Virus record (IMG/VR): IMGVR_UViG_3300042402_002564 | Coordinates: 124,001 to 188,000 of that record | Direction: 5' to 3' (one strand) | DNA length: 64,000 bases | Translations under genes and position numbers: made by a program | Shown here: positions 3,492 through 56,318 of the stretch, piece by piece | How the letters are laid out: each line of letters begins with the position of its first letter | Position numbering within the stretch: the stretch's first letter is position 1 | Notes under the pieces: model-generated | Told to the model about the DNA's origin: nothing | What the model saw: only the letters and a program-made list of their open reading frames with translations | Databases searched by the model: none

Positions 3492-3502
3492 CCCCCCTGA
3501 CC

Positions 3503-3539: not shown

Positions 3540-3557
3540 CCAACCCACACCAGACCG

Positions 3558-3818: not shown

Positions 3819-3890
3819 ACGATTGTTAACGGGGGCACGATAGGGTGCCCCCACCCTGTAGAATTTAAAAGTCAACACGGGACACACCCC

Positions 3891-4130: not shown

Positions 4131-4180
4131 TACAATCGGGGGGAGAAATCCCCCCTTCTCAAACCACCTCACCTAGAACC

Positions 4181-4507: not shown

Positions 4508-4549
4508 GTGACACTTATGGGGTGCTGAGTTCTTTATACTTAGCACCCC
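4505..4549. repeat. adjacent palindrome and 12-bp inverted repeat
   Basis: TAAGTG-A-CACTTA (4505-4517); GGGGTGCTGAGT-N7-ACTTAGCACCCC (4519-4549). Confidence 0.8.
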
Positions 4550-4928
4550 TACATTCGTGCGTAAGTGTAAATGTGACAGTCTGTGACAGACAGTTGACGG
4601 TATAACGGTATCGTGATAACGGCGGGCCGTGCCCCCTACCCCCCCCTTAGCTAAAATTGATGACTCCCCTAACCTACAGAGGTGACAAAACGAGTGAGTG
4701 ATTTCATGTTCATAAGAAAAAATTTTACAGAAAAATTTCGCCTCATAAGGTCGATAAAAACCCTCACAAGGGTCTCCGAGAATCCTCACATAAGTATCCG
4801 TATGCAACTAAAGTATGTTATAATGTGTCTCCGAGAGTCTCTATGGATTCTCATATCACACGCCCTTAAAAATTTTTCGAGGGGTCTCAAAGGGGTGATA
4901 TATAGTGATGTAATGAGAAGGTGGTGAG

Positions 4929-5093
4929 ATGGACGACAAAATCTATCACATTTATAACAAAGAGAATCAGTGTGTATCTCCATGTTTATCTGAGGAAGAA
5001 TTCAGTGATACATGGAAAGAACTCACAGAAGATTCTTATGAATATGAAGAACTCGAAGCTTCTTATTCAAAGCAAGAGGAAGCGTCTTATTGA
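4929..5093 (+). CDS. small acidic hypothetical protein (54 aa)
   Basis: Hand-read ORF MDDKIYHIYNKENQCVSPCLSEEEF...EEASY, more protein-like than the overlapping track ORF 4921-5115. Confidence 0.65.
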   Translation: MDDKIYHIYNKENQCVSPCLSEEEFSDTWKELTEDSYEYEELEASYSKQEEASY

Positions 5094-28700: not shown

Positions 28701-30296
28701 TATCAAATTGGCGATGTTCTTACAGTTGAACAAATCGGTTCTGAGTCATTAGGAAGAAATTTACAGTTATCATTATCAAATATTTCTGGAACTAATGAAC
28801 TAATTTTAGATCAAGTTCAAGGTGAATTTAAAATTAATGGGGCAATGCCTATACAATATGTTGATAGTGTTGCTGGAATTACTACAATTTTAACTACTTC
28901 TGGTCCAAATGCAGTAATTACCGATTTAGAACTTTATTCCCTTGAGACAGATGGTTTACATATTAAAGTAAATCATAAAAATCATGGTATGCATTCTGAA
29001 ATTAATAAAGTTCAGATTAATCATGTTGATACTGATATAACACCTACCATATTGACTGCAGACTATACAAATTCTGACACTGGAAGTATCAGTATTGCAA
29101 GTACTACATCTTTCACAACGTTTGAAAATGTTTCGGTTGCTTCCACAAATCCAGGATATGTTTTAATAGATAATGAAATAATTTCATATACTGGAGTTGG
29201 TGATGGACAATTAATAGGTATTACTAGACAAATAGATCAAACTAGATCTTACAACTATCCTACTGGTTCAATAGTTAAAAAATATGAATTGAATGGAGTT
29301 TCATTAAGAAGAATAAACAAAACTCATGATTTACAAGATTCCCTAGTACAAAGACCAATAGGATTAGATTACTATTATATTAAACTTGACACATCATCAA
29401 ATGGAACTGATAGAAATAGTGGAAATGGATTTGAAAAACTATACATTAATGAATCCAAATCTTCTGGTGGCAATTCAGTAAAAGCATCACAAAATATACA
29501 ATATGAAATAGCAAGACCAATAGTTCAAACATTAGTTTTATCTGAAACTAACATTCGTTCATCAATTAAAACTGTAACTGGAACTAGTATTGATGGTGAT
29601 GAAGTATCATTTATTGAATCTGAAATACTTCCATTAAATATAACAGAAAATACATTCTTCGATACTCCAAGAATTGTTGCATCTAAGGTTAATGAAACTG
29701 ATAAATTGTCCAGTTTACCTGGAAATAAATCATTAAGCGTTACATTTAACCTATCTACTTTAAATAATACAGTATCTCCTGTTATTGATTTAGATAGAGT
29801 TGGATTAATTTTAACAACTAATAGAGTAAATAATGTTATTGACGATTACGTAAATGATAGTAGAACATCTTCAATATACGAAGATCCAACAGCTTTCATT
29901 TACACTAATAAGATGATTTCTTTAGAAAATTCTGCATCATCTATTAAAATTTTATTATCTGCTTATGTAAATGTTTTTAGTGAAGTTAGAGCATTTTACA
30001 CCATATCTAATAAATTAGAAACAAATCCAATTTATTATCCATTCCCAGGATATAATAACTTAGATGTAAATGGAAAAGTGATTGATATCTTTAATAGTGA
30101 TGGACTACCTAATAAGTTAGTACCAAAAACAGATATTCTTGGTTTTGGTAATAATGAAGTTACCTTTAGAGATTATGAGTTCTTTATTGATAATTTACCA
30201 GAATTTAGATACTTTGGCATTAAACTAATTGGAACATCTACAAATCAGGCACATCCACCAAGAATAAAAGATTTACGTGTAATTGCATTGGCTTAA
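22788..30296 (+). CDS. large virion structural protein, VrlC/DUF4815-like (2502 aa)
   Basis: NLNVSPYFDDF...VLFKPG.PVQARELT.LQS, APGADRL, RYRMQD...LE.RI.NLEYYT.LSLLE, DPLGQSF, GSLFKSQN..TW. Confidence 0.85.
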   Translation: MPKETNLNVSPYFDDFDPEKQYYQVLFKPGLPVQARELTSLQSVLQNQIEQLGNHLFKEGSVVIPGQINYNNSLFAVEVESEYLGIPFASYASELLGKVIRGENSNVSAKVVLIIGPEFSERGYHTIYINYLSSGTDERQAFANGETLLLEENLVLNNLNFQSGQGFAITAPTDCTSTGSALFLSEGIYFLRGSFVKVDEQVLILEPHANNPSYRVGFEILEEVITSSQDQSLNDNAKGFNNYAAPGADRLKITASLTKKPLDSEKNENFIEFLIVRNGTVSHINETPEYNVIVDELARRTYDQSGDFYVKPFSIVSRESLNDSKGNNGIFNSNQLTYGNLTPNSSLGVYKISPGKAFIKGYEVNVRGVTFLDFEKTRTTKTLENQKINFITGPTLTLNRVFGAPTIGFTTDNTISLRDQRIGVAHSIFAGKEIGVARVYDYALESGSYSSFDQNLNEWDIALYDIQTYTEITLNEPLTLTAPTFIEGKSSGATAYLRYNTTSGIITAYNGQGKFIYGEKLIFNGIEGNRVSTAITAYSIDDVKSLYSLVGSGITFNADVKPQLKLSYGQVRISPKSGAAPGICTVTSNDLVFLNAVKPGDLVSFTNPAINNAQLKTFAKIVSVTDDFNIIISGITTVSNICDGGLPTSQITPVDFSILKSKFQSSSDNTLYTPLPKKWISNVNLTNSNLTIRKEFDVTITANTTNTIQADEDEFFLPFDEERYVLVNSSGYIEPLTPDKFRYTNGNREIRIFGVNSVGSARLIATLEKINIKNKVKNISRVNSIIVNKSNLAQSGIGSTTLNDGLSYGNYGYGLRVQDKELCLLVPDVTKVYGIFESSDTTDPKLPRISLFNLNGPTGRVDDLIIGEEFIGRESGAVGIFVNKVDSLNLEFIYLNELRLKLNETIEFKETSIRGVVNGFVEGDSNITNRYLLDSGQKETICDYSKLIRITNNKEPKRKLRIIFEASQYSSSDSGDLTTASSYDQINYCDLPLINDSTRLTDILDIRPRVLPFNPESSVSPFEFFGRTFSEENNSSKNIIASDESITLTYSFYLPRIDKIYLNKNRRFQLINGIPSENPLPPIPIDDSLEVATINLPPYICNANSLDISLKQHKRYRMQDVAQLEDRIKNLEYYTALSLLETNTENLFVPDENGLSRFKSGIFVDNFSTRNSQVKVGPVKNSIDPANLELRPSPFTTEIDLQIGSKSLIGIGTTASPIADTKFVNDLVGNNVRRTGQLITLDYDEVVEIKQPFATRVENVVPYLVISYKGTIELFPSSDIWIDQVRLEPQRLELDLYTESREELIHSGFDPQTGLTPVTWDAWEATWTGSTTSVQNSAVFAGSTSNQIGRTITTTNTFRNIQTTTVTRTGTETRSGSQLRLAEQVDVVNEGDRVVSTSVIPFMRSRNVEFTGKSFRPFTRLYTFFDGVDVNRFVLPKLIEIEMITGKFNVGEIITGRMSTGTETEINDSTPFITFRVAKSNHKYGPISNPTDTFTVSPYNQSYTIPEEYSSSSILLNVDTASLSDITQGLYRGFIQTGMRLRGEEGEAVITNVRLFTDHVGTLIGSFFIPNPNIISNPSFETGIKLFKLTSSSTNSSVGGLVSTDGEEQYFAQGTINNQQETIRTTRKPRFDEETVSESRAAVDVQSTTAVSTFTTVSTITLPPPPPPDPPWGGDPLGQSFFITNNTGVFVTAVDVFFNTKDETLPVTVQLRPVVNGVPSTEVYPFGEVVVESKDVVTSSDGSLPTKVLFPSPIYLNPNSENAIVLLAQSYEYTVWISRMGEIDIGTLSQPESRQVLVSAQPMLGSLFKSQNGSTWTPSQYEDLKFNLYSARFKGSNGSITFYNPELSEGNAQIATLLKDSLEFNAKKIIVTLNDTVDLSGVDLGNTIIQMNNNAFANYVGAGGSASGNLNIVNPGIGYTPSNGSSFTFTNIPLVSSTGNGKNATANITIGTVNGLNGVAIAATISNGGSGYQIGDVLTVEQIGSESLGRNLQLSLSNISGTNELILDQVQGEFKINGAMPIQYVDSVAGITTILTTSGPNAVITDLELYSLETDGLHIKVNHKNHGMHSEINKVQINHVDTDITPTILTADYTNSDTGSISIASTTSFTTFENVSVASTNPGYVLIDNEIISYTGVGDGQLIGITRQIDQTRSYNYPTGSIVKKYELNGVSLRRINKTHDLQDSLVQRPIGLDYYYIKLDTSSNGTDRNSGNGFEKLYINESKSSGGNSVKASQNIQYEIARPIVQTLVLSETNIRSSIKTVTGTSIDGDEVSFIESEILPLNITENTFFDTPRIVASKVNETDKLSSLPGNKSLSVTFNLSTLNNTVSPVIDLDRVGLILTTNRVNNVIDDYVNDSRTSSIYEDPTAFIYTNKMISLENSASSIKILLSAYVNVFSEVRAFYTISNKLETNPIYYPFPGYNNLDVNGKVIDIFNSDGLPNKLVPKTDILGFGNNEVTFRDYEFFIDNLPEFRYFGIKLIGTSTNQAHPPRIKDLRVIALA

Positions 30297-40690: not shown

Positions 40691-41293
40691 ATGTCAAATA
40701 GAAACATCAGAACAATCACTGATTTTAAATCAAAACTACAAGGTGGAGCAGCCAGACCAAATTTATTTGAAGTATCTATCCCATCTTTTCCATCTTCAGT
40801 AACTGGGTGGGACGATGAAACATTCCAGTTTATGTGTAAAGCGGCTGCTTTACCAGCTTCTAACGTAGCACCAATTGATGTTCCATTTAGAGGTCGTATT
40901 TTAAAAGTTGCTGGGGACAGAACATTTGATACCTGGACTGTTACTATCATCAATGATGAAGACTTTAAATTAAGAACTGCATTTGAGCAGTGGATGAATC
41001 AAATTAGTAAATTAGATAATGCTACTGGTGCCACAAGTCCAACATCATACATGGTAAACGCATTTGTTTATCAATTAGGTAGAGGTGCATCAAGATTTTC
41101 AACAGGAAATACTGATAATTTAACCAATACCGCATTGAGAACTTATAAGTTCTACGATATTTTCCCAACTAATGTATCTCAAATTGATCTTTCATATGAT
41201 ACCTCAGATACAGTTGAAGAGTATACAGTAGAATTCCAAGTTCAGTGGTGGCAAACTGAGGGTAGTGACCAAACTGGTACTGAAATTAGATAA
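40691..41293 (+). CDS. gp19: tail tube protein gp19
   Basis: GAARPNLFEV, PFRGR.LK.AGDRTF..WTVT..ND. Confidence 0.96.
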   Translation: MSNRNIRTITDFKSKLQGGAARPNLFEVSIPSFPSSVTGWDDETFQFMCKAAALPASNVAPIDVPFRGRILKVAGDRTFDTWTVTIINDEDFKLRTAFEQWMNQISKLDNATGATSPTSYMVNAFVYQLGRGASRFSTGNTDNLTNTALRTYKFYDIFPTNVSQIDLSYDTSDTVEEYTVEFQVQWWQTEGSDQTGTEIR

Positions 41294-41299
41294 TAAATA
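41293..41299 (+). promoter_or_regulatory. late promoter
   Basis: ATAAATA upstream of gp20. Confidence 0.7.
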
Positions 41300-41327
41300 G
41301 TAGAGATTTAGAAGGTTATTTTTAGTA

Positions 41328-42995
41328 ATGGCAAAATTATTTGGATTTTCTATAGAGAATAAAGAATCTCTTTCACCTTCTGTAGTATCCCCCGTTCCTC
41401 AAAATAATGAGGACGGGGTTGATCATTATCTAACAAGTGGTTTTTTTGGATCTTATGTAGATATAGAGGGTGTTTATAGAACCGAATATGATTTAATTAA
41501 AAGATACAGAGAAATGTCACTTCACCCAGAAGTAGACAGTGCTATTGAAGATATCGTTAATGAAGCTATTGTTAGTGACACAAACGATACTCCAGTACAA
41601 ATTGAATTATCTAATTTAAATGCTAGTGATGGATTAAAAAAGAAGATAAGAGAAGAATTTAAAACAATTTTAGATTTATTAGATTTTGATAAAAAATCTC
41701 ATGAAATTTATAGGAATTGGTACATTGATGGAAGACTTTATTATCATAAAGTAATCGATTTAAAAAATCCACAAAAGGGTATTCAAGAATTAAGATATGT
41801 TGACGCATTAAAAATGCGTTATGTTAGACAATCTATTTCTAAAAAGAAGAATAATGGTGGAGTTAGAATAAAAAATTCTAACGACGAAAATCCAATGGAT
41901 TATGATTTTCCACAAATTGAAGAATACTTCATCTATAATCCTACTGCCCAATCTCCAATTGGGTCTATGAATGGAAGAAATTCTAGTCAGGCAAATTCTG
42001 GAATCAAAATTGCGAGAGATGCGATAACTTATTGTACTTCTGGATTAGTAGATAGAAATAAAGGAACTTGTCTGTCATACTTACATAAAGCAATTAAGTC
42101 TCTCAATCAACTCCGCATGATTGAGGATAGTCTTGTTATTTACAGATTGTCTCGTGCTCCAGAGCGTCGTATCTTCTATATTGATGTAGGTAATCTTCCT
42201 AAAATTAAGGCAGAGCAATATCTTCGTGATGTTATGATGCGTTATCGCAATAAATTAGTTTACGATGCCTCTACAGGTGAAATTAGAGATGATAAGAAGT
42301 TTATGAGTATGCTTGAGGACTTCTGGTTACCTCGTAGAGAAGGTGGTAGAGGTACAGAGATTACAACTCTTCCTGGTGGTCAGAATCTTGGAGAAATTAC
42401 AGATATCAAATATTTCCAGAGTAAATTATACAAATCATTGAACGTTCCTCCATCAAGAATGGAAGGAGAAGGTGGATTTAATCTTGGTAGATCTTCAGAA
42501 ATTTTGAGAGATGAACTCAAATTTACCAAATTTGTTGGTAGATTAAGGAAGCGTTTTTCAAACATGTTTAATGACATGTTAAAGACCCAATTAATATTAA
42601 AAAATATCGTAACTCCAGAAGATTGGGAGCAAATGAGTGAGCATATTCAATATGACTTCCTTTATGATAATCACTTCTCTGAACTAAAAGAAGCAGAATT
42701 GATGACCGAAAGGTTAAATATTGCTGCTACTGCAGAACCTTATATCGGCAAATACTACTCTCAAGATTATGTAAGACGTAAGATTTTACGTCAAACTGAT
42801 GAAGAGATTATTGAGCAAGATCAATTAATCAAAAAAGAAATTAAAGCAGGCATTATTCCAGATCCAAATGCACCAATAGACCCAGCAACTGGTATGCCAA
42901 TGCCTTCTGATGCAAACCAAGATAATATTAATGGTGCATCAGGAAAAGTTCCTACAGAACCAGGGATAGATGGTTCAAGTACAGAAGTTAAGTAA
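41328..42995 (+). CDS. gp20: portal vertex protein gp20
   Basis: RAPERRIFYIDVGNLP, EDFWLPRREGGRGTEITTLPGG. Confidence 0.98.
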   Translation: MAKLFGFSIENKESLSPSVVSPVPQNNEDGVDHYLTSGFFGSYVDIEGVYRTEYDLIKRYREMSLHPEVDSAIEDIVNEAIVSDTNDTPVQIELSNLNASDGLKKKIREEFKTILDLLDFDKKSHEIYRNWYIDGRLYYHKVIDLKNPQKGIQELRYVDALKMRYVRQSISKKKNNGGVRIKNSNDENPMDYDFPQIEEYFIYNPTAQSPIGSMNGRNSSQANSGIKIARDAITYCTSGLVDRNKGTCLSYLHKAIKSLNQLRMIEDSLVIYRLSRAPERRIFYIDVGNLPKIKAEQYLRDVMMRYRNKLVYDASTGEIRDDKKFMSMLEDFWLPRREGGRGTEITTLPGGQNLGEITDIKYFQSKLYKSLNVPPSRMEGEGGFNLGRSSEILRDELKFTKFVGRLRKRFSNMFNDMLKTQLILKNIVTPEDWEQMSEHIQYDFLYDNHFSELKEAELMTERLNIAATAEPYIGKYYSQDYVRRKILRQTDEEIIEQDQLIKKEIKAGIIPDPNAPIDPATGMPMPSDANQDNINGASGKVPTEPGIDGSSTEVK

Positions 42996-44781
42996 CTTTA
43001 ATAAATTTATTTTTTAGAAGTCCTTTTCTTCTCAGTATAAAAAGATTATTTTTATCATATCCTATAAAGTCATTATCGATTTTATAGGATATTTTATTTT
43101 TCTCCCAAGTTTCTATATTATATTTTGAGTTTAAAGTTAATGGATATTTTTGATTTTCATTAAAAATAAATTTTTTCTGAATATCAATAATTTCTGAGTC
43201 AATTTGTACAATATTTGAGCAATATAACTCAATAAATTCAAATAGTTTTGATTTATTTTTAAATAAGAATTCAAAACTACTAGCATGTAAAGAATGACCA
43301 GTTTTGGCACCCTGTGTTATCTTCCCAGTCTTAATATAAGTAGAGACAATATTATATATTTCTTGATAATGAACTCCAATGAATCCATCATCATTTTTTA
43401 TACAGTCAAATAAATTATCATAAAATTTTCTATAACTTATATTTAAAATATTAAAGCAATATTTCGATAGCACTTGAGTATATCCCGCTATATGTAATTG
43501 AACAATCAACCATCCGTACATATAACATTCAATTAATTCATCTGTGGTTAAAGTATCGGTTTTATTAATTAATTCTATACTTTCTTTTACTTCTGAGTAA
43601 TCTTTTTCATTAGTGAATGAAACGTAATCCTCTGCTTTGATAGTTTCAATACCATATATTTTTCTAGATAATTCACTGTTCAATTCACTGTTACCAAAAA
43701 CTTGACAAAACCAAACATCAATAGATTCATGTTGCCCAAATTCTAATATTTTAGAGAATCCTTCCTTCCAAGAATCTATAGTTTCGTTTGGTAATCCTAA
43801 AATTAACTCGGTATAAGTTTTTACATCATGCTCTTTACTTTTTTCAATATGAGATGTAATGTTATTAATACTCATATTTTTTCTTTTAATTGCTTTAAGT
43901 GTTGGTTCATTCATACTTTGAACACTTATAGTTACACCTCTACTAATATCTCCAAGTATTTTTGCTATTTCAAAAACTACTTCTGTAGAATTTTTAGAAT
44001 ATTGCAAATTAACAGATTCTAATTTGCTATTATCAGCAACTTCTCTTATTAATTTTGCTATTTCCAAATCTCTTTCTTTATACATTCCAAAATTTGCATC
44101 TGCACAAAATATAAATGCAACATTATTATTTTTAATCCATTCAAGATCATTTTTTACACGATCTAGATTAAACATTTTAACTTTACTATAGGTTAATCCA
44201 CCCCAATCACAAAAAGTACATGAATGGGGGCACCCTCGATTAGTTTCAATAGTAGAAGCCCAAAGAGTATTTGGATTGTCTTTTACAATTTGATCAAATA
44301 CTTTAGATTCATATGGACTTGGAAAGTCTAATTGCTCTATTCTACTTTTTTGATATATTTTTTCTATTGTTTTATTTTGAACAATACTAGTTAATAAATC
44401 TAAGTAACTTTCTTCACCTTCACCAATTATTACACAATCTATAAATTCATTATCAAGAATTTTCAAAGTTGCTTGTGGTCCACCAAATTGAATAATACAG
44501 TCTGGAAATTTTTCTTTTATTAGTTTTGATAAAAATAGACAATATTGCTCATTCCAAACGTAACAACTAAAACTGCACACTGTTGGATTGTCTAATCTTT
44601 CCAGTATTTTATTTGGATGCTCTCTTTTAAAGATAATATCTTTTAATACAAAATTATTTTTTACTTCATCAAATTGATTACAATAACTCCATAAACAACC
44701 AACACTGTAAGGAAGCCAATATGTGTCTTCATTTCTAATTTCTACAGAATATTGCGGTTGAAATAAATATATATTTTTCAT
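42988..44781 (-). CDS. cobalamin-binding-domain radical SAM enzyme (paralog 2)
   Basis: N-terminal B12-binding-like region (FSCYVWN, GGPQ, GEGE); ETNRGCPHSCTFCDW CxxxCxxC; DANFG; TELILGLP.ET. Confidence 0.9.
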   Translation of the reverse strand: MKNIYLFQPQYSVEIRNEDTYWLPYSVGCLWSYCNQFDEVKNNFVLKDIIFKREHPNKILERLDNPTVCSFSCYVWNEQYCLFLSKLIKEKFPDCIIQFGGPQATLKILDNEFIDCVIIGEGEESYLDLLTSIVQNKTIEKIYQKSRIEQLDFPSPYESKVFDQIVKDNPNTLWASTIETNRGCPHSCTFCDWGGLTYSKVKMFNLDRVKNDLEWIKNNNVAFIFCADANFGMYKERDLEIAKLIREVADNSKLESVNLQYSKNSTEVVFEIAKILGDISRGVTISVQSMNEPTLKAIKRKNMSINNITSHIEKSKEHDVKTYTELILGLPNETIDSWKEGFSKILEFGQHESIDVWFCQVFGNSELNSELSRKIYGIETIKAEDYVSFTNEKDYSEVKESIELINKTDTLTTDELIECYMYGWLIVQLHIAGYTQVLSKYCFNILNISYRKFYDNLFDCIKNDDGFIGVHYQEIYNIVSTYIKTGKITQGAKTGHSLHASSFEFLFKNKSKLFEFIELYCSNIVQIDSEIIDIQKKFIFNENQKYPLTLNSKYNIETWEKNKISYKIDNDFIGYDKNNLFILRRKGLLKNKFIKVT

Positions 44782-46586
44782 TCATCAATTTTAGATATAG
44801 TATTTTTTAGTAATCCCTTTCTTCTTAAAACCCAAAAATCATTTCGTATTGACTCATCTCTTTTATTTGAAACCATTAAACTTGTTGGTTTATCTTCCCA
44901 TGTTGTTGTATCAACAGAAGAAGAAATAGTAATAGGATAATCTACCTCAGAGTCATAAACAAAGTTTTTTTGAAGATCCCAAAATTCATTAGTTATACCA
45001 CCAAATTTTACCAGAGATTTATCAATTAAGGCAAATACTTCATTCCTATTATTCATAAAAAATGAAAAATCATTAGGAGAATTAAATTCTAATGAATGTC
45101 CACTTTTATTATCTGGTAAAATTCCCTCTGTTAAGTAATTTTTTACATCGAACTTTAATTTTTGAAAATATTCACCAATTATTCCGTTGTCAGTTTGAAC
45201 CTTTTCAAATATTTCATCATAAAACATCCTATAAGTTATATTTTTATTGTAAAAAAGATATTTTGCTATTAGTTGAGCATATCCATTTATATGGAATTGT
45301 ATTACTGTCCAAGCATACAAATAACTTTCAATTAATTCCAAAGTTGCCATTGAATTAGTTTTATTAACTATCTCAACAATTTCTTTGAATCCATGATATT
45401 CCTTAGGATTAGTGAATGAAATATAGTCATACGCCTTTACTGTTTCAATTCCGTGCATCTTTCTAGATAATTCACTTCCCAATTCACTATTACCAAATAA
45501 TTGGCAGAACCAAACATCAATCGATTCGTGTTGACCACACTCCAAAACTTTAGATAATCCGTCTTTCCAAGTTTCTAAAGTTTCCTCGGGTAATGGCAAA
45601 ATCAGTTCAGTGTATGTTTTAACTCCATATTCTTGACTCATTCTCATATGATTAGTCAAATCATTTATATGAAGATTCTTTCTCTTAATAGCCTTCAAAG
45701 TTGGTTGATTCATACTTTGAACGCTAATTGTTATTCCCCTAAGACAATGTTCTTCAAGTATTTTTGCAATTTTAAATACTGCTTCTGTTGAATTCTTAGC
45801 AAATTGTAAAACAACGTCACCAACATTGGTTTCTTTTAATTTGTCTCTGATTATCTCTGCTATAAGTATATCTCGCTCCTTATACATTCCAAAATTAGCA
45901 TCAGCAACAAATAAGTATCCAATATTATTATTTTTTATCCAAGTAATATCATCTTCAACTCTCTTTATGTCGAAGTGGTCTACTTTACTCATAGTAGTTC
46001 CACCCCAATCACAAAAAGTGCATCTATGAGGACAACCTCTATTTGTTTCTATAGTTGCAGCCCAAATTACATCGGGATTTTCTTCAATTATTTTACTAAA
46101 GACATTAGATTGATATGGACTTGGATAATCTAATGTAGATAATCTAGTTCTCTCGTAATATTTTTTTATTTCTTTGTTTTCTATAATAGAATTAAGTATG
46201 TCTAGAAAATTTTCTTCACCCTCAGAAATTATTACAGTATCAATAAAATCATTTTCCTCTTGCATTTTTTTAGATGCTTGAGGTCCACCAAATTCGATAA
46301 TGCAATTTGGAAATTTTTCTTTTACGAGTTTAGCTATTCCTAGACAATACTGTTCATTCCAAATATAACAACTAAATCCACATAAAACAGGATTATCCAA
46401 TCTTTCTAATATTTTATCTGGATGTTCTCTTTTAAAAATTATATCCTTTAAAATAAAATTATTTTTTACTTCATCAAATTGATTACAATAACTCCAAATA
46501 CATCCAACACTATATGGTATCCAATAATTTTCTTGTTTTCTAACTTCTACAGAATATTGTGGTTGAAATAAATATATGTTTTTCAT
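44778..46586 (-). CDS. cobalamin-binding-domain radical SAM enzyme (paralog 1)
   Basis: Same architecture with RGCPHRCTFCDW; start set at 46586 because MKNIYLFQPQYSVE aligns with the paralog start. Confidence 0.9.
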   Translation of the reverse strand: MKNIYLFQPQYSVEVRKQENYWIPYSVGCIWSYCNQFDEVKNNFILKDIIFKREHPDKILERLDNPVLCGFSCYIWNEQYCLGIAKLVKEKFPNCIIEFGGPQASKKMQEENDFIDTVIISEGEENFLDILNSIIENKEIKKYYERTRLSTLDYPSPYQSNVFSKIIEENPDVIWAATIETNRGCPHRCTFCDWGGTTMSKVDHFDIKRVEDDITWIKNNNIGYLFVADANFGMYKERDILIAEIIRDKLKETNVGDVVLQFAKNSTEAVFKIAKILEEHCLRGITISVQSMNQPTLKAIKRKNLHINDLTNHMRMSQEYGVKTYTELILPLPEETLETWKDGLSKVLECGQHESIDVWFCQLFGNSELGSELSRKMHGIETVKAYDYISFTNPKEYHGFKEIVEIVNKTNSMATLELIESYLYAWTVIQFHINGYAQLIAKYLFYNKNITYRMFYDEIFEKVQTDNGIIGEYFQKLKFDVKNYLTEGILPDNKSGHSLEFNSPNDFSFFMNNRNEVFALIDKSLVKFGGITNEFWDLQKNFVYDSEVDYPITISSSVDTTTWEDKPTSLMVSNKRDESIRNDFWVLRRKGLLKNTISKIDE

Positions 46587-46609
46587 TTCATTGAACTTTA
46601 TGTATGTTG

Positions 46610-46624
46610 TATTTATCATAAATA
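46610..46624. promoter_or_regulatory. back-to-back divergent late promoters
   Basis: TATTTAT-C-ATAAATA: ATAAATA on both strands, each about 24 nt from the ATG it faces (46586 on -, 46648 on +). Confidence 0.75.
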
Positions 46625-46647
46625 TATCAGAATTAAATGATTAAAAA

Positions 46648-46806
46648 ATGGACGAACTTTTAGATATGATTATCTCTGACGAATCACCTGCACAAGTCAG
46701 TGATAAAATTAAAGAACTTCTTTTCGCAAAATCTGCGGATAAAATTGAAGCATTGAGACCAGCAGCAGGAAATTCATTATTTGGGAATCAAGAAGAGGTA
46801 GGATGA
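46648..46806 (+). CDS. small prohead-core-like protein (gp67 position, 52 aa)
   Basis: Hand-read ORF MDELLDMIISDESPAQVSDKIKELLFAKSADKIE..RP...SLF; position downstream of gp20. Confidence 0.75.
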   Translation: MDELLDMIISDESPAQVSDKIKELLFAKSADKIEALRPAAGNSLFGNQEEVG

Positions 46807-46807
46807 T

Positions 46808-47128
46808 ATGAAATCATTCAAGCAATTTATATCTGAATCAGTTAATATTGCTGGTGATTTTACTGGAAATCTTTATATTAATTCCGAAACAGAACAACCT
46901 CAGCAAGTAGGAGAAAACTATGTTGCTGATGTTATGTGGCAAGGAAACTTGTATAGATTGGAATTAGTAACCAAATCTGGATTGCCCTCAAAACAGGATT
47001 TAGGTGAGCAACTTCAAAGACAATATCCTGGAGCAATTGTTCATCAGATTTATCCAGCAGAAGAAAAGAACTTTAACATTAAAAACGTACAAAGATATCA
47101 CCCCTCAAAATTAGAATGGATTGATTGA
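46808..47128 (+). CDS. probable internal head protein with a capsid-targeting-like N-terminus
   Basis: MKSFKQFISE resembles the T4 IPII/IPIII capsid targeting sequence MKTYQEFIAE. Confidence 0.7.
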   Translation: MKSFKQFISESVNIAGDFTGNLYINSETEQPQQVGENYVADVMWQGNLYRLELVTKSGLPSKQDLGEQLQRQYPGAIVHQIYPAEEKNFNIKNVQRYHPSKLEWID

Positions 47129-47130
47129 TA

Positions 47131-49050
47131 ATGGCTCAGTGGAATATACAAAATCAAGATTATCTAAATCAAGAAAGATCTTTATTTGAAGTTAATAATA
47201 TTGCAACTAAAGATGGTCAACCAGTTAGTGTTGATAATCCATTTCCAGTATCTCTTGGAAGTTCTAGTATTACAATTAATGGTGATATTAGTATTCCTGG
47301 AATAGTAACTGTTACAAGTACACCAGAAAATCCAATTCATTCCCATATAGTTGAAGTTGGAACCAGTGGTGCATTAACAACACCATATCTTCCTGTTGGT
47401 GTTGGAACAGTAAATATAAATCTTTCATATCTTCCAGTTGGCATTTCCTCATTACTGAATACAGTATCAATCTCAAATACAAGTTTTTATATTCTAAATC
47501 CTGTTACTTCTGTGACGGTAGGTGGAACAGTATCAATTGCTAATACAGTATCAATCTCAAATACAAGTTTTTATATTCTAAATCCCGTTACTTCTGTAAC
47601 CGTAGGAGGAACTGTATCAATTGCCAATACAGTATCAATCTCAAATACAAGTTTTTATGTAACCAATCCAGTCACAACAGTCGCAGTATCAGGTATTGGT
47701 TCTACTGTTACAGTTCAGGGAACAGTAGGAATTGGAACAACTGGGCAAGTATCACTCAATCTCAATAGTGCTCCTGTAAGTTCTAGTAATCCCCTACCAG
47801 TTACGGGAACAGTATCAATTTCCACATCATCAGCAGCAGCATCTATTACATTTCCCCCAATAGCAACTGATGCATTTGGTCGTTTAAGAACTTCAACTCC
47901 ACTTACACTTTTTGATAGTTCCCACAGATACAAGGACAATAATCTTTGGAGTGGTTTAGTTGTAGGAACTGGTTCAACAGTTGGATTTGTAACAGCACAA
48001 GGTTTAGTCAATATTAGTATAGGAACTACTGCTGGATGTTCTGCGATTAGGGAAACCACAAAAGTATTCTCTTATCAACCAGGAAAATCATTACAAGTGA
48101 TGAATACTTTTGTAATGAACCCACCAAAAGCAAATCTTCGTCAAAGAGTAGGATACTTTGGTGCAGATAATGGAATGTATCTGGAACTTGATGGAAGCAC
48201 TTTATATTTTGCGGAAAGAAGTTTATCTACTGGAATAACAACACAAATTTCGCAAAATAACTGGAATATTGATACAATGCTTGGTGCAGGACATCTCAAT
48301 CCATCTGGTGTTACATTAGATATTTCCAAAGCACAAATTTTGTGGATGGATATTGAATGGTTAGGACTTGGAACAGTTAGATTGGGTTTTGTAGTCGATG
48401 GGAAGTTTATTCACTGCCATTCATTCCATCACGCAAACTTAATCACTTCAACTTATATCACAACAGCATCACTACCATTAAGATATGAGATTGTAAATAC
48501 TGGAATTACAACCAGTGCAAGCACACTTAAACAAGTTTGTTCTACTGTAATTTCCGAAGGTGGTTATGAACTTCGTGGATTACAACAGGCAATAGGAACA
48601 CCAATCACGGCACCAAGAACTCTTACAACTGCTGGGACTTTTTATCCTATAGTTAGTTTGAGATTGAAAACTACTGCTTTGGATGCAATTATCATTATGA
48701 CTGCACTTTCTCTTATGGGAATTGGTAATGGAGTTAATTATAATTGGCAGGTAAGAGCATCTGGAACTACAACAGCTGGAAGTTGGGTGAGTGCTGGTGT
48801 GGATAGTAGTGTTGAATATAATCTTACTGGAACTTCTTATGCTGGTGGAAGAATACTTGCGAGTGGATTTTTAAACTCATCAAATCAAGGTTCTCCATCA
48901 ATTGATATTCTAAAAGAAGCACTATTCAAGTTTCAGTTAGAAAGAAATAGTTTGACTTCTACACCTTTTGAACTCACACTTCTTGCTACTGCTGCAACTA
49001 ATGGTGAGCAGATTTTTGCTTCAATGGACTGGGAAGAAATTAGTAGGTAA
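47131..49050 (+). CDS. probable virion structural/fibre protein with a repeat stalk and a globular C-terminal domain
   Basis: V/S/T/G-rich N-terminal half with tandem repeats; DAFGRLR.S.P.TLFDS, YQPGKS, EWLG.G.VR.GF C-terminal domain. Confidence 0.7.
   Translation: MAQWNIQNQDYLNQERSLFEVNNIATKDGQPVSVDNPFPVSLGSSSITINGDISIPGIVTVTSTPENPIHSHIVEVGTSGALTTPYLPVGVGTVNINLSYLPVGISSLLNTVSISNTSFYILNPVTSVTVGGTVSIANTVSISNTSFYILNPVTSVTVGGTVSIANTVSISNTSFYVTNPVTTVAVSGIGSTVTVQGTVGIGTTGQVSLNLNSAPVSSSNPLPVTGTVSISTSSAAASITFPPIATDAFGRLRTSTPLTLFDSSHRYKDNNLWSGLVVGTGSTVGFVTAQGLVNISIGTTAGCSAIRETTKVFSYQPGKSLQVMNTFVMNPPKANLRQRVGYFGADNGMYLELDGSTLYFAERSLSTGITTQISQNNWNIDTMLGAGHLNPSGVTLDISKAQILWMDIEWLGLGTVRLGFVVDGKFIHCHSFHHANLITSTYITTASLPLRYEIVNTGITTSASTLKQVCSTVISEGGYELRGLQQAIGTPITAPRTLTTAGTFYPIVSLRLKTTALDAIIIMTALSLMGIGNGVNYNWQVRASGTTTAGSWVSAGVDSSVEYNLTGTSYAGGRILASGFLNSSNQGSPSIDILKEALFKFQLERNSLTSTPFELTLLATAATNGEQIFASMDWEEISR
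47458..47676 (+). repeat. 84-bp in-frame tandem repeat (~2.6 copies)
   Basis: Units start at 47458, 47542 and 47626 and encode NTVSISNTSFYILNPVTSVTVGGTVSIA. Confidence 0.9.
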
Positions 49051-49060
49051 TTGAGTATTT

Positions 49061-49068
49061 TATAAATA
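49061..49068 (+). promoter_or_regulatory. late promoter
   Basis: TATAAATA, intergenic. Confidence 0.8.
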
Positions 49069-49094
49069 ACTAATAAAGTCTTTATTATATAATA

Positions 49095-49364
49095 ATGCAA
49101 GTAACAAAACCACTTTCTATAGAAACTGATTTAGCAACTTCTTCTGGTGCTGGAACAAGTATACTTTCTGCAACATGCGTAAGATTATATAATGGAGCTG
49201 GTGCAGCAACTACAATTGCAATTTCAGCATCTGTTGGGGCGAGTGCATCTTATTCATTTACTTTACCATCTGGTGCTGTTGAATTTATACAAAAATTACC
49301 CACTGATATTATCTGGGCTTCAGCATCATCTATAAAAGTAACAAAAGTAGGATTTACTAACTAA
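49095..49364 (+). CDS. small hypothetical virion-associated protein
   Basis: ORF track; late promoter; ATCVRLYN...KVGFTN; directly before gp21. Confidence 0.75.
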   Translation: MQVTKPLSIETDLATSSGAGTSILSATCVRLYNGAGAATTIAISASVGASASYSFTLPSGAVEFIQKLPTDIIWASASSIKVTKVGFTN

Positions 49365-49369
49365 GAAAA

Positions 49370-50020
49370 ATGAAACTTATCAGAGAAGAAATCGAAAAGG
49401 TAGAACTTATCACCGAAGATGTTGGTGGTAAAAAACAAATGTATATCCAAGGTGTATTCCTCCAAAGCGAAACAGTTAATCGTAATGGTAGAATGTATCC
49501 TTTTTCGATTATGGAAAGAGAAGTAAATCGTTATAATGAAAATTATGTTAAAAAAGGTAGGGCATTAGGAGAACTTGGTCATCCAGATGGTCCTACAGTA
49601 AATCTCGATAGAGTTTCTCATAAAATTACTGAATTAAAGCAAAGTGGTAATAATTTTGTAGGTAAGGCACAAATCTTATCAACTCCAATGGGAAAAATTG
49701 CAGCATCTCTTCTTAAGGATGGTGTAACTCTTGGTGTTTCATCCCGTGGTATTGGTTCATTAAGAGAGAACAATAAAGGATATAAAGAAGTTGGTGAAGA
49801 CTTCATGCTTGCAACTGCGGCTGATATTGTTGCTGATCCTTCTGCTCCTGATGCTTTTGTTCAAGGCATTATGGAAGGTAAAGAATGGATTTGGGACGGT
49901 GGCATTCTCCGTGAAAAACTCGCTGAAAATACCAAAAGAAAAATTAATAATTTAGTCGATCAAAGAAGACTAGAAGAGAATAAAATTGAGTTATTTAATG
50001 AATTTTTGAATTCATTATAA
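49370..50020 (+). CDS. gp21: prohead core protease gp21
   Basis: NRNGRMYP, ALGELGHP, GVSSRG.GS, DIVADPSAPDA. Confidence 0.97.
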   Translation: MKLIREEIEKVELITEDVGGKKQMYIQGVFLQSETVNRNGRMYPFSIMEREVNRYNENYVKKGRALGELGHPDGPTVNLDRVSHKITELKQSGNNFVGKAQILSTPMGKIAASLLKDGVTLGVSSRGIGSLRENNKGYKEVGEDFMLATAADIVADPSAPDAFVQGIMEGKEWIWDGGILREKLAENTKRKINNLVDQRRLEENKIELFNEFLNSL

Positions 50021-50040
50021 TATCTTAAATTTAGATTTTA

Positions 50041-50047
50041 ATAAATA
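50041..50047 (+). promoter_or_regulatory. late promoter
   Basis: ATAAATA upstream of gp22. Confidence 0.7.
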
Positions 50048-50087
50048 AATATAGATTAAATTAATAAAGGTTAATCGGAGAGTTCAA

Positions 50088-51314
50088 ATGTCTCGTGGTA
50101 AAAATTTACAAGAAATGGAAGCAGGCACTAAGCAATCCAGAACCGCTGTCAATGCAGGTGCAAAGGCAGGGGATCCAATGCAAAAGCTAGCACCTGGTGC
50201 AGTTGCTGGTCAGACTGGTAGCTGGGAAGATCTTGGTGGTCCTACTCCAGAAAACTATCGTTCCGATGATAGTTCTGCAGAATTAAAGACCCCAGGAAAA
50301 ACTTTACAGCAAGTAAAGAATGTTGTAAATAAAGGTGCTAAAGCTGCTGATCCAATGAAGGGTCTCAAAAAGAGTGAAGCAGTAAAAGAAGATGAAGATC
50401 TAGAAGATGAAGACCTCATCGAAGAAGAAATTGAAGAGGACGAAGATCTTGATGAAGTTGAAGAAGACGTTGAAGAAGAAGTAGTTTCCGAAGCTTCTAA
50501 AGAAGAAGAGGATGAAGAGGATGAAGAAGATGAAGATGAAGAGGGTGAGGAAGAAGACAAAAAAATGAAGAAAGAAGAGTTTGATATTGAAGAAGATGTC
50601 AATGCTCTTTTAAACACTGGTGATGAAGAAGAACTCTCCGAAGAGTTTAAAGAAAAGGCAAAGGTAGTATTCGAATCTGCCCTTAGATCAAAAGTTTCTG
50701 AAATCAAAGAAGAACTAGAAGTTCAGTATGAGCAGAGACTTATTGAAGAAGTAGATGCTATTAAGGCATCTCTTGAGGAAAGAATTGATTCTTACCTTGA
50801 GTATGTTTCTGAAGAATGGATTTCAGAAAACGAATTAGCAATTGAGCACGGTCTTAAGACCGAAATGACCGAATCATTCCTCCAAGGAATGAGAGGACTT
50901 TTTGAAGAGCATTATGTATCAATCCCTGAAGATAAATATGATGTGTTAGAGAGCATGGTAGAAAAACTTGATGAAATGGAGACAAAACTCAACGAGCAGA
51001 TTGAGAAGAACATTTCCCTAAACAAGCGTCTCTCCGAGTCGGTTGCACAAGGAATCTTTGATAGTGTTTCTGAGGGTCTAGCACTTTCTCAGAAAGAGAA
51101 GCTCGCTTCACTTGCCGAAAGTGTTGAGTTTGAAAGTGACGTAGAATATCGTGAAAAACTGGAGACTTTGAAGGAATCATATTTCCCTTCAAAAACAGCT
51201 GCTCCACAAGCAAAAACTGAAACTCTTTCTGAAGGAGTAGACGTTGCTACTGAGTATCACTCAGATTCAATGCACGCTTACTTGAGAACTCTTTCAGCTG
51301 TTGCTAAAAAGTGA
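50088..51314 (+). CDS. gp22: prohead core scaffold protein gp22
   Basis: Glu-rich tract, ELSEEFK.KA..VFE, YLEYV.EEW..EN; between gp21 and gp23. Confidence 0.93.
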   Translation: MSRGKNLQEMEAGTKQSRTAVNAGAKAGDPMQKLAPGAVAGQTGSWEDLGGPTPENYRSDDSSAELKTPGKTLQQVKNVVNKGAKAADPMKGLKKSEAVKEDEDLEDEDLIEEEIEEDEDLDEVEEDVEEEVVSEASKEEEDEEDEEDEDEEGEEEDKKMKKEEFDIEEDVNALLNTGDEEELSEEFKEKAKVVFESALRSKVSEIKEELEVQYEQRLIEEVDAIKASLEERIDSYLEYVSEEWISENELAIEHGLKTEMTESFLQGMRGLFEEHYVSIPEDKYDVLESMVEKLDEMETKLNEQIEKNISLNKRLSESVAQGIFDSVSEGLALSQKEKLASLAESVEFESDVEYREKLETLKESYFPSKTAAPQAKTETLSEGVDVATEYHSDSMHAYLRTLSAVAKK

Positions 51315-51367
51315 ACTTAATATTATTCAAATAAAACACAATTACACTTAGTAAAAGGTAAAAGCAA

Positions 51368-52777
51368 ATGTTCCAAACTGAGCATCTGCAGGAAAAGTGG
51401 GCACCACTTCTCGACTATGATGGTCTTGATCCAATCAAAGATTCCCATAGAAGAGCTGTAACCGCTGTCCTGCTCGAAAACCAAGAAAAATTCTTAAGAG
51501 AACAGCAAGCTTTCTCAAGCGGCGTTCTTATGGAGACCCCAACCAATGCAGGTAATGCTGCTGGTGCATCTGGTGGTTTCTCAGGTTCCGCAGCTGCAGG
51601 TGGTCCTGTAGCAGGTTTTGACCCAGTTCTGATTTCTCTAATCAGACGTGCAATGCCTAACCTCGTTGCATATGACCTCGCTGGTGTTCAACCAATGAGC
51701 GGTCCTACTGGACTCATCTTCGCAATGCGTTCACGCTATAGCGATCAGTCTGGCACCGAAGCTCTATTCAACGAAGCAGATACTGCATTCTCTGGTCAGA
51801 ACTCTGGTATCGGTCTTACTGCGGCTAGCGATGTAACCGCAGGTATGGGTACTACTACCCAGTATGGTTCAAACCCAGGTCTTCTCAATCCTGTTGGTAC
51901 TGGTGCATCCACTGGTTCTTCTGGTTACAACGTTGGTCAGGGTATGTTCACTGGAGATTCTGAGAATCTCGGTAACGGTAATGACAACCAGTTCAATGAG
52001 ATGGCATTCTCAATCGAGAAGGTTCTCGTTGAAGCAAAGTCAAGAGCCCTCAAAGCTGAGTACTCCTTAGAACTCGCTCAGGACCTCAAGGCTATCCACG
52101 GTCTAAACGCAGAAGCAGAACTTGCTAACATTCTCTCCACTGAGATCCTCGCTGAGATCAACAGAGAAGTTATCAGAACCATCTACAAGGTCGCTGAGCA
52201 AGGTGCTGCTGTAAATACTGCTACCGCTGGTGTATTTGACCTTGACGTTGATTCCAACGGTCGTTGGTCTGTTGAGAAGTTCAAGGGTCTACTCTTCCAA
52301 ATCGAGCGTGATGCTAACGCAATCGCACAAAGAACTCGTAGAGGTAAGGGTAACGTTATCATGTGTTCTGCTGACGTTGCATCTGCTCTCAGCATGGCTG
52401 GTGTACTCGACTACACCCCTGCTCTGAATGCAAACCTCAACGTTGATGACACTGGTAACACCTTCGCTGGTGTTCTGCTCGGTAAGTTCCGCGTATATAT
52501 CGACCCATATTCAGCAAACGTATCTGCTAACCAGTACTACGTTGTTGGTTATAAGGGTTCCAGCCCATATGATGCTGGTCTCTTCTACTGCCCATATGTT
52601 CCTCTCCAAATGGTTCGTGCCGTTGGTGAGAACACCTTCCAGCCTAAGATTGGCTTTAAGACCAGATATGGTCTTGTTGCTAACCCATTTGCTGAAGGCA
52701 CCACTCAAGGTCTCGGCAGACTTCAAGTTAACGCAAACCGTTACTACAGAAGAGTTCAAATCAAGAACCTCATGTGA
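51368..52777 (+). CDS. gp23: major capsid protein gp23
   Basis: DPVLISLIRRAMP, VQPMSGPTGLIFAMR, SRALKAEYS.ELAQDLKAIHG, FQPKIGFKTRYG. Confidence 0.99.
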   Translation: MFQTEHLQEKWAPLLDYDGLDPIKDSHRRAVTAVLLENQEKFLREQQAFSSGVLMETPTNAGNAAGASGGFSGSAAAGGPVAGFDPVLISLIRRAMPNLVAYDLAGVQPMSGPTGLIFAMRSRYSDQSGTEALFNEADTAFSGQNSGIGLTAASDVTAGMGTTTQYGSNPGLLNPVGTGASTGSSGYNVGQGMFTGDSENLGNGNDNQFNEMAFSIEKVLVEAKSRALKAEYSLELAQDLKAIHGLNAEAELANILSTEILAEINREVIRTIYKVAEQGAAVNTATAGVFDLDVDSNGRWSVEKFKGLLFQIERDANAIAQRTRRGKGNVIMCSADVASALSMAGVLDYTPALNANLNVDDTGNTFAGVLLGKFRVYIDPYSANVSANQYYVVGYKGSSPYDAGLFYCPYVPLQMVRAVGENTFQPKIGFKTRYGLVANPFAEGTTQGLGRLQVNANRYYRRVQIKNLM

Positions 52778-52798
52778 TTTCTGGTCACATTTATCAAG

Positions 52799-52823
52799 AG
52801 GGACCCGAAAGGGTCCCTTTTTT
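52799..52823 (+). terminator. intrinsic terminator after gp23
   Basis: AGGGACCC-GAAA-GGGTCCCT followed by a T-tract; CTAAATA late-promoter variant follows at 52827-52833. Confidence 0.9.
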
Positions 52824-55763: not shown

Positions 55764-55792
55764 TTGTAGATATTTCATATGGATGGTATAAT
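55764..55792 (+). promoter_or_regulatory. sigma70-type promoter for the gp55 operon
   Basis: TTGTAG-N17-TATAAT with extended TGn. Confidence 0.7.
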
Positions 55793-55820
55793 TGATATAC
55801 ATATTAAATTAGGTATTCTT

Positions 55821-56318
55821 ATGATAACTACAAATGCCATGACAAAGAGGAAGAGATCGGTTCATTACGTCAATAACAAAGATTTTTTAGCAGCATTAAT
55901 TGAGTATAAAAAAGCAATTGCTGATGCTGAAGGTAGAGGTGACCCAAAACCACAAATTACGAATTATCTTGGTGAATGCTTTTTAAAAATTGCAACTCAT
56001 TTATCATTTAAACCAAATTTTGTCAATTACATCTTTAAGGATGATATGATTAGTGATGGTATTGAAAACTGTGTTCAGTACATCCATAATTTCAATCCAG
56101 AAAAATCTCAAAACCCTTTTGCATACTTCACTCAGATTATTCACTACGCATTTCTGAGACGCATTCAGAAAGAAAAGAAGCAACTGGAAATTAAGAATAA
56201 GATTCTTGAAAGAACTGGATATGATGAGGTCTTTTTTGACGACAACCATATTGACGGAATGAATTATTCTGACTATAATAGCATCAAGGATAGTATTCAC
56301 TCTAAAACAAGGTACTGA
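55821..56318 (+). CDS. gp55: late-transcription sigma factor gp55
   Basis: HYVNNK.F, KIA.HLS.KPNF, NPFAYFTQI..YAFLRRI.KEK; the track ATG at 55779 lies inside the promoter, so 55821 or 55839 is preferred. Confidence 0.95.
   Translation: MITTNAMTKRKRSVHYVNNKDFLAALIEYKKAIADAEGRGDPKPQITNYLGECFLKIATHLSFKPNFVNYIFKDDMISDGIENCVQYIHNFNPEKSQNPFAYFTQIIHYAFLRRIQKEKKQLEIKNKILERTGYDEVFFDDNHIDGMNYSDYNSIKDSIHSKTRY

What the first reader, a model, noticed from the sequence alone, without database searches (positions are those of the whole stretch)
46610..46624. Perfect palindrome forming two divergent late promoters
TATTTAT-C-ATAAATA places a gp55-type box on each strand, each about 24 nt from the start codon it faces. 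This spacing matches other late promoters in the window (roughly 20-40 nt). It suggests the radical SAM island is integrated into the late regulon rather than being a passive insertion. It also restores late transcription of the prohead genes that the insertion separated from gp20.
Basis: partly seen in the sequence, partly recalled or inferred. Interest (0 to 1): 0.65.

Follow-up and report, generated by a model that had tools for sequence, protein, structure and literature searches.

The report
Back-to-back late promoters beside radical-SAM island
A 15-base palindrome in a T4-like cyanophage is two standard late-promoter boxes set back to back, one for the head genes and one for an inverted pair of radical-SAM enzyme genes; related phages show both boxes are conserved, but the promoter type itself is ordinary.

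Summary
TATTTAT-C-ATAAATA lies at 46610-46624 in the 61-nt gap between two diverging genes. Each strand carries an ATAAATA box exactly 23 nt before the start codon it faces: rSAM gene ATG 46586 (-) and the 52-aa head-module gene ATG 46648 (+).

The genome is a complete 246.5-kb T4-like cyanomyophage that encodes gp55, gp33 and gp45. ATAAATA occurs 44 times within 60 nt upstream of gene starts, against about 3 expected, mostly 15-40 nt out.

- **Relatives without the island:** 36 distinct gp20-to-p52 junctions carry only the + box.
- **Relatives with the island:** all 28 distinct junctions (29 counting one cut by a locus end) carry a minus box 0-2 nt (once 7) from the + box. Flanks and even the first island gene differ.
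- **Palindrome:** it is a by-product. Most relatives pair ATAAATA with CTAAATA.
- **Plus box:** it is ancestral, so it is retained rather than restored.

T4 itself has divergent late boxes between genes 4 and 53. No transcript data could be obtained. Verdict: a real, conserved bidirectional late-promoter pair, a new member of a known kind, of modest interest.

The parts
46610..46624 (.). 15-bp palindrome, formed by two late-promoter boxes back to back. The 8-mers GATAAATA (-) and CATAAATA (+) share the central base pair 46617.
   Evidence: the only divergent box pair in the genome
46610..46616 (-). Minus-strand ATAAATA box, 23 nt upstream of the rSAM_A ATG. Proposed late promoter of the two-gene radical SAM operon. 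Inferred start site about 46603-46605.
   Evidence: conserved in 28 of 28 island-bearing junctions and absent from 36 of 36 island-less ones. The start site is inferred from T4 geometry (PMC2988020).
46618..46624 (+). Plus-strand ATAAATA box, 23 nt upstream of the 52-aa gene. Proposed late promoter of the prohead gene run. Inferred start site about 46629-46631.
   Evidence: the same box (ATAAATA or CTAAATA) sits 23-33 nt upstream of p52 in all relatives, with or without the island
44778..46586 (-). rSAM_A, a 602-aa cobalamin-type radical SAM enzyme and first gene of the minus operon. The real start is ATG 46586, not 46619.
   Evidence: Pfam Radical_SAM 7.8e-14; TokK 2.4e-63; N-termini; CxxxCxxC invariant
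42988..44781 (-). rSAM_B, a 597-aa paralogue (58% identical), overlapping rSAM_A by 4 nt. Its stop overlaps the gp20 stop by 8 nt in convergent orientation.
41328..42995 (+). gp20 portal protein
   Evidence: Pfam Portal_T4 2.6e-196
43057..43092 (+). 15-bp-stem hairpin followed by a U-run on the + strand, 62 nt after the gp20 stop and inside the antisense of rSAM_B. Probable terminator of gp20 transcripts.
   Evidence: RNA fold -17.4 kcal/mol, z -8.4, 0 of 200 shuffles as good; identical in L004 although the sequence beside it differs
46648..46806 (+). 52-aa conserved head-module gene (phrog_14164), first gene served by the + box
   Evidence: homologues in about 100 loci
46808..52777 (+). Downstream + strand run: 106-aa gene (phrog_1742), 641-aa virion protein, 89-aa gene, gp21 protease, gp22 scaffold, gp23 capsid. 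Further + boxes lie at 49062 and at 50041/50045.
55779..56318 (+). gp55 late sigma factor homologue, the protein expected to read the boxes
   Evidence: 38% identical to T4 gp55, E 1.4e-20; phrog_234 4e-67

Best explanation
The palindrome is a compact bidirectional late promoter. It consists of two T4-type, gp55-read boxes (NATAAATA) on opposite strands that share their first (N) base pair. The + box is the ancestral late promoter of the prohead gene run (p52 through gp21-gp23). The - box is the island's own late promoter and drives the two inverted TokK-like radical SAM genes, which cannot be reached by read-through because every neighbouring gene runs the other way. By T4 geometry, transcripts should start about 6 nt after each box, near 46630 (+) and 46604 (-), giving leaders of about 17 nt. 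The two start sites are only about 27 bp apart and each polymerase must cover the other's box. The two promoters therefore probably cannot be occupied at once and compete, each being activated by sliding clamps of one orientation. Shown here: the motif, its spacing, its genome-wide association with gene starts, the presence of gp55, gp33 and gp45, and conservation of both boxes only where the island is present. Inferred: promoter activity, late timing, start sites and mutual exclusion.
For: ATAAATA is 14-fold enriched in the 60 nt upstream of gene starts (44 against 3.2 expected; reverse-complement control 5), with spacers centred on 20-30 nt. It is depleted elsewhere. Only 9 minus-strand copies exist in 246.5 kb, and 3 of them lie 23-31 nt upstream of minus-strand units. 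One of those units is the bona fide late operon gp4-gp2-gp48-baseplate wedge. The other minus-strand units have TATAAT-like sequences upstream instead. The late machinery is encoded: gp55, gp45 and gp33 next to gp59. Comparison: 36 distinct island-less junctions have the + box only. All 28 distinct island-bearing junctions have TATTTA[T/G]-N0-2 (once N7)-[A/C]TAAATA, although flanks are diverged, rSAM proteins are 41-64% identical, and the first minus gene is either an rSAM or a glucosyltransferase-like gene. The pair occurs nowhere else in 1.46 Mb of related loci. On a gp20 tree the island label needs at least 3 changes, 2 of them forced by well-supported branches, so the association is not a single inherited accident. 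NATAAATA is the reported late-promoter motif of cyanomyoviruses (PMC2984593). T4 late-promoter rules are taken from PMC2988020. T4 has TATAAATA on both strands between divergent genes 4 and 53.
Against: The shared central base gives C and G at the N position, the least common choices among 51 boxes in this genome (A 26, T 18, C 5, G 2). In three relatives the minus box is only 5-8 nt from the ATG, too close for a normal leader. rSAM homologues in other genomic contexts mostly lack a nearby box. The island-bearing and island-less samples came from two different queries, and the sequences are related, so the counts are not independent trials.
Confidence: 0.78

Rival explanations
1. The radical SAM genes are transcribed by unmodified host polymerase from a sigma-70-type promoter (early or constitutive), and the minus ATAAATA is not what drives them. 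A candidate is an extended -10 on the minus strand, TGaTATATT at 46629->46621, just upstream of the late box.
For: The sequence TG-n-TATATT is readable on the minus strand and is kept in the 99%-identical relative L004. Many cyanobacterial promoters are said to work with a -10 element alone (own knowledge).
Against: The consensus scan lists no minus-strand sigma-70-like site in the intergenic gap, and such sites are at chance level in the region (57 found against 50.9 expected). There is no -35 match. The TG-n-TATATT is absent from the other island-bearing lineages, whereas the late box is present in all of them.
Confidence: 0.1
2. The dyad is a site for a dimeric DNA-binding protein, or a recombination scar or target through which the island was inserted. 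Its resemblance to late promoters is secondary.
For: It is a perfect 7+1+7 dyad. The right edge of the island coincides with the + box. Island presence is patchy on the gp20 tree. Island GC is 23-30% against about 34% in the flanks.
Against: In most relatives the arms are not symmetric (ATAAATA paired with CTAAATA) and the spacer ranges from 0 to 7 nt. Each arm varies only within the known late-box degeneracy. The + arm exists without the - arm in all island-less phages. Such palindromes are common here (20 in the window). The DNA shows no favoured structure (z +0.82).
Confidence: 0.07
3. The minus box is a chance AT-rich match with no function, and the island is silent or expressed some other way.
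For: The genome is 66% A+T, and short AT motifs arise easily.
Against: Only 9 minus-strand copies exist in 246.5 kb. The box is retained in 28 of 28 diverged island-bearing junctions and is absent from 36 of 36 island-less ones. Both rSAM genes are intact, with invariant CxxxCxxC cysteines.
Confidence: 0.03

Closest known systems
T4-type late promoters, and their cyanomyovirus form NATAAATA (S-PM2, Syn9)
   Same: The same 7-8 bp A/T box, placed 15-40 nt before start codons. There is no conserved -35 region. The phage encodes gp55, gp33 and gp45 (PMC2984593; PMC2988020).
   Different: Nothing in the box itself differs. The N position is C/G here because the two boxes share it, and A/T is the commoner choice in this genome.
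Divergent late boxes between T4 genes 4 and 53
   Same: Two late boxes on opposite strands lie in a short (47-nt) gap between diverging late genes, 26 and 28 nt from their start codons. This is read from the T4 sequence; I did not check start-site mapping for these two.
   Different: In T4 the boxes are crossed: each lies nearer the other gene, so the 5' ends of the transcripts would overlap. Here they are back to back, 1 nt apart, so the transcripts would not overlap, and one arm serves an accessory island rather than a core virion gene.
TokK / CysS cobalamin-dependent radical SAM C-methyltransferases
   Same: rSAM_A aligns with TokK over residues 19-484 (E 2.4e-63) and with CysS (1.1e-38). 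The best NCBIfam match is the KedN5 C-methyltransferase subfamily. The CxxxCxxC cysteines are invariant.
   Different: Scores are far below family cut-offs (166 against 700 bits). The genes sit in a phage head-gene cluster under a late-type promoter, and the substrate is unknown.

Membership tests
T4-type (gp55-dependent) late promoter | An 8-bp box TATAAATA, or NATAAATA in cyanomyoviruses | tested here: met
   CATAAATA at 46617-46624 (+) and GATAAATA at 46617->46610 (-); motif definition from PMC2984593
T4-type (gp55-dependent) late promoter | Placed a short, typical distance upstream of the gene it serves | tested here: met
   23 nt on each side; genome-wide spacers are mostly 15-40 nt
T4-type (gp55-dependent) late promoter | No conserved -35 element | tested here: met
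   Sequence beyond the boxes is poorly conserved among 28 junctions and among 51 genome boxes
T4-type (gp55-dependent) late promoter | A+T-rich segment just downstream of the box, with an A-rich start region | tested here: inconclusive
   4 of 6 bases are A/T after each box. A is enriched 5-8 nt after the box across the genome's boxes, and both arms have A there.
T4-type (gp55-dependent) late promoter | The phage encodes gp55, gp33 and the gp45 clamp | tested here: met
   gp55 phrog_234 4e-67; gp45 E 4.5e-28; gp33 phrog_254 1.7e-28
T4-type (gp55-dependent) late promoter | Transcripts start about one helical turn after the box, late in infection, and depend on gp55 | not testable with these tools
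Bidirectional (divergent) promoter pair | Two promoters on opposite strands in one gap between diverging genes, both kept by selection | tested here: met
   28 of 28 island-bearing junctions keep both boxes; 0 of 36 island-less junctions have the minus box; all 29 contexts found lie at this junction
Cobalamin-dependent (class B) radical SAM methyltransferase | CxxxCxxC cluster motif in a radical SAM core | tested here: met
   Pfam PF04055 7.8e-14 and 7.9e-15; C185, C189 and C192 invariant in 8 sequences
Cobalamin-dependent (class B) radical SAM methyltransferase | N-terminal B12-binding domain | tested here: inconclusive
   PF02310 hits fall below the gathering score (25.6 and 21.2 against 32.1 bits), but the alignment with TokK starts at residue 19
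Cobalamin-dependent (class B) radical SAM methyltransferase | Methyl transfer to an unactivated carbon of a defined substrate | not testable with these tools
   No assay is possible and the substrate is unknown

The most novel reading that the evidence does not exclude
The back-to-back boxes act as an either-or switch. Each initiation commits the shared 15 bp to one direction, chosen by the orientation of the incoming gp45 clamp. This fixes a ratio between head-gene and radical SAM transcripts. The TokK-like methylases, joined in many relatives by a glucosyltransferase-like gene, would be made late because they modify a virion component or a glycan during head assembly. That would be a capsid-linked C-methylation system, carried by many uncultured cyanomyophages and absent from all cultured ones in GenBank.
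Probability: 0.12. Interest if true: 0.65.

Novelty: new member of a known kind. Interest (0 to 1): 0.35.

Why it matters
The result shows how an accessory gene island inserted in reverse orientation into the most conserved late operon of a T4-like phage is wired for expression. It brings, or keeps, its own copy of the phage's late promoter box, abutting the existing one. That predicts the TokK-like radical SAM methylases are made together with head proteins, which narrows guesses about what they do. It also gives a clean natural test set, 28 junctions with the island and 36 without, for the sequence requirements of cyanophage late promoters. The promoter type and the divergent arrangement are already known from T4, so the finding is confirmatory rather than surprising.

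Tried and rejected
- **Sigma-70 and terminator scan:** sigma-70-type sites in 41000-50200 are at chance level, with none on the minus strand in the gap.
- **Structure:** folding the palindrome region as single-stranded DNA gave nothing (z +0.82), so a hairpin or cruciform role was dropped.
- **Start codon 46619:** this start, inside the palindrome, was rejected from homologue N-termini.
- **Pfam on the extra first gene in relatives:** no hit. PHROGs later gave a glucosyltransferase match.
- **rSAM homologues outside the gp20/p52 context (35 loci):** only a few have a late box nearby, so 'rSAM genes are always late' is not supported as a general rule.
- **tblastn of rSAM_A against 50,697 GenBank phage records:** one weak hit, in an unrelated gut phage.
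- **Left edge of the island:** a near-box ATAAATT sits just after the gp20 stop, but I could not show it is a remnant of the original box.
- **GC-rich start of the window:** a distant DNA search gave only short matches to hypothetical genes.
- **Literature searches:** no description of this island was found.

Full report
**What is there**

Window 46610-46624 reads TATTTATCATAAATA, a 7+1+7 palindrome. It lies in the 61-nt gap between two diverging genes.

- To the left, on the minus strand, are two paralogous genes of about 600 aa with radical SAM and B12-binding domains: 44778-46586 and 42988-44781.
- To the right, on the plus strand, are a 52-aa gene (46648-46806, phrog_14164), a 106-aa gene, a 641-aa virion protein, an 89-aa gene, gp21, gp22 and gp23.
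- gp20 (portal, 41328-42995, +) ends 8 nt inside the 3' end of the second radical SAM gene, in convergent orientation.

The window is bases 124001-188000 of a complete 246,502-bp viral genome with terminal repeats and 33.8% G+C. Its nearest named relatives are Synechococcus myophages, at about 75% DNA identity in structural genes.

**Start codons and spacing**

The mechanical ORF list starts the minus gene at ATG 46619, inside the palindrome. All homologues, including the paralogue next door, begin MKN[IV]Y[LM]FQP and have no in-frame extension. The real start is therefore ATG 46586. Each ATAAATA then ends exactly 23 nt before the start codon it faces. The two 8-mers, GATAAATA (-) and CATAAATA (+), share base pair 46617.

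**Is it more than chance?**

A palindrome of this size is not unusual. There are 20 in the window and 48 in the genome, against about 8 per shuffle of the window. The motif and its position are what stand out.

- ATAAATA is depleted in the window: 18 copies against 44 +/- 7 in shuffles.
- It is strongly strand-biased in the genome: 71 copies on + and 9 on -.
- It is concentrated before genes. There are 44 copies in the 60 nt upstream of 326 predicted starts, against 3.2 expected and 5 for the reverse complement, with spacers mostly 15-40 nt.
- Three of the nine minus-strand copies lie 23-31 nt upstream of minus-strand transcription units. One of these units is a classic late operon: head closure gp4, gp2, baseplate tail tube cap and a baseplate wedge protein.
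- The other minus-strand units have TATAAT-like sequences upstream instead.
- This is the only divergent box pair in the genome.

**The reading machinery**

The genome encodes all three late transcription proteins.

- gp55 is at window 55779-56318: 38% identical to T4 gp55, phrog_234 at 4e-67.
- The gp45 clamp is present.
- gp33 lies next to gp59, as in T4: phrog_254 at 1.7e-28.

NATAAATA is the reported late-promoter motif of cyanomyoviruses, all of which carry g55, g33 and g45 (PMC2984593). T4 late promoters are an 8-bp box about one helical turn before the start site, with no -35 element. They are activated by a sliding clamp whose orientation sets the polarity (PMC2988020).

Searches of IMG/VR with the 106-aa protein, with rSAM_A and with an rSAM alignment gave 192 loci in total.

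- **Island-less relatives.** gp20 is followed directly by the 52-aa gene. In 36 distinct upstream regions the + box is always present (29 ATAAATA, 7 CTAAATA), usually overlapping the gp20 stop codon. A minus-type box is never present.
- **Island-bearing relatives.** All 28 distinct junctions have TATTTA[T/G], then 0-2 nt (23 times 1 nt, once 7 nt), then [A/C]TAAATA. One further junction is cut by a locus end.
- **Specificity.** In 1.46 Mb of related loci this pair was found in 29 distinct contexts, every one at this junction.

The flanks are diverged and the rSAM proteins are 41-64% identical. The number of rSAM genes varies from one to three. In many lineages the first minus-strand gene is a glucosyltransferase-like gene of about 305 aa (phrog_2835) rather than an rSAM.

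On a gp20 tree the island label needs at least three changes, two of them forced by well-supported branches. One island-bearing locus (L019) is nested among island-less ones. The association of minus box with island is therefore not one inherited accident. The caveat is that the samples came from different queries and gp20 may recombine.

1. The palindrome is a by-product. Most relatives pair ATAAATA with CTAAATA, which is what two independent late boxes would do and not what a symmetric protein site would do.
2. The + box is older than the island, so it is retained rather than created to restore head-gene transcription.

The + box is probably more important here, though. A 15-bp-stem hairpin with a U-run lies on the + strand 62 nt after the gp20 stop. 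It gives -17.4 kcal/mol, z -8.4, and none of 200 shuffles folds as well. It would stop gp20 transcripts before they run antisense through the island.

**How it most likely works (inferred)**

gp55-polymerase binds either box and starts about 6 nt downstream, near 46630 (+) or 46604 (-), giving leaders of about 17 nt. The start sites are about 27 bp apart and each complex must cover the other box. The two promoters therefore probably exclude each other. Clamps of opposite orientation would activate opposite directions. The island cannot be expressed by read-through, because all neighbours run the other way, so its own late box is its only conserved signal.

**Rivals**

- **Sigma-70-type promoter.** An extended -10 (TG-n-TATATT, 46629->46621, minus strand) is readable. 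It has no -35, is not reported by the scan and is not conserved.
- **Structural role.** The region has no favoured fold.

**Weak points**

- There are no transcript data.
- C/G at the shared N position is the least common choice in this genome.
- Three relatives have the minus box only 5-8 nt from the ATG.

**Known relatives of the arrangement**

In T4 the 47-nt gap between genes 4 (-) and 53 (+) holds TATAAATA on both strands, 26 and 28 nt from the start codons. There the arrangement is crossed rather than back to back. The present case is a new member of a known kind.

**The island itself**

rSAM_A matches the cobalamin-dependent C-methyltransferases TokK (2.4e-63) and CysS, and the KedN5 subfamily below its cut-off. 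The CxxxCxxC cysteines are invariant. Island G+C is 23-30%, against about 34% in the flanks. No GenBank phage record holds a close homologue, yet at least 541 IMG/VR stretches do. I found no description of the island in the held literature. Its substrate is unknown. Late co-expression with head genes is the main clue.

Noticed in passing
window 43057-43092 (+): A 15-bp-stem hairpin followed by a U-run lies 62 nt after the gp20 stop, embedded in the antisense of the rSAM_B coding sequence (RNA -17.4 kcal/mol, z -8.4). It is a probable one-way terminator for gp20 transcripts. It is identical in the relative L004 although the sequence beside it differs.
   Followed up: partly
window 44763-44769 and 46568-46574 (+): Each rSAM gene carries a + strand ATAAATA antisense to its codons 2-7, created by the codons chosen for I-Y-L-F. 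These could be cryptic antisense late promoters, and the second would lie in tandem with the real + box, 50 nt upstream. Other island-bearing lineages use different codons and lack them.
   Followed up: partly
window 1-5000 (genome about 120-130 kb): This stretch has 42-57% G+C in a 33.8% G+C genome, with only short ORFs on both strands. There are no tRNAs, and only short DNA matches to hypothetical genes of Synechococcus phages.
   Followed up: partly
window, whole: 7+1+7 palindromes are more frequent than in shuffles (20 against a mean of 8.3, maximum 16). Many lie in the giant genes between 7.8 and 31 kb. The cause was not examined.
   Followed up: no
window 9542-21169 and 22788-30296 (+): Two giant ORFs of 3875 and 2502 aa, each preceded by a late box region (boxes at 7188 and 21169). 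They are presumably virion proteins and were not analysed.
   Followed up: no
L006, L010, L014 and many others (island-bearing relatives): Island content varies: one to three rSAM genes; often a glucosyltransferase-like gene of about 305 aa (phrog_2835, 1.9e-29) as first gene; and a 220-aa + strand gene of unknown family between gp20 and the island. In these relatives the 106-aa and 641-aa genes are not next to the 52-aa gene (they lie about 11 kb away in one contig).
   Followed up: partly
L137, L143, L172 (junction upstream of the first rSAM gene): The minus late box is only 5-8 nt from the ATG. The predicted transcript would be leaderless, or it would start inside the start codon.
   Followed up: no
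genome 52886-53172 (L116 5086-5172): The gp4 operon's minus late box (31 nt from its ATG) directly abuts an unannotated + strand ORF of about 275 aa. The only + strand box-like sequence there is CATAAATT, in a crossed position as in T4 genes 4/53.
   Followed up: no
window 51400-52800: The gp23 capsid gene has 47-49% G+C, far above the 33.8% genome mean and its neighbours.
   Followed up: no
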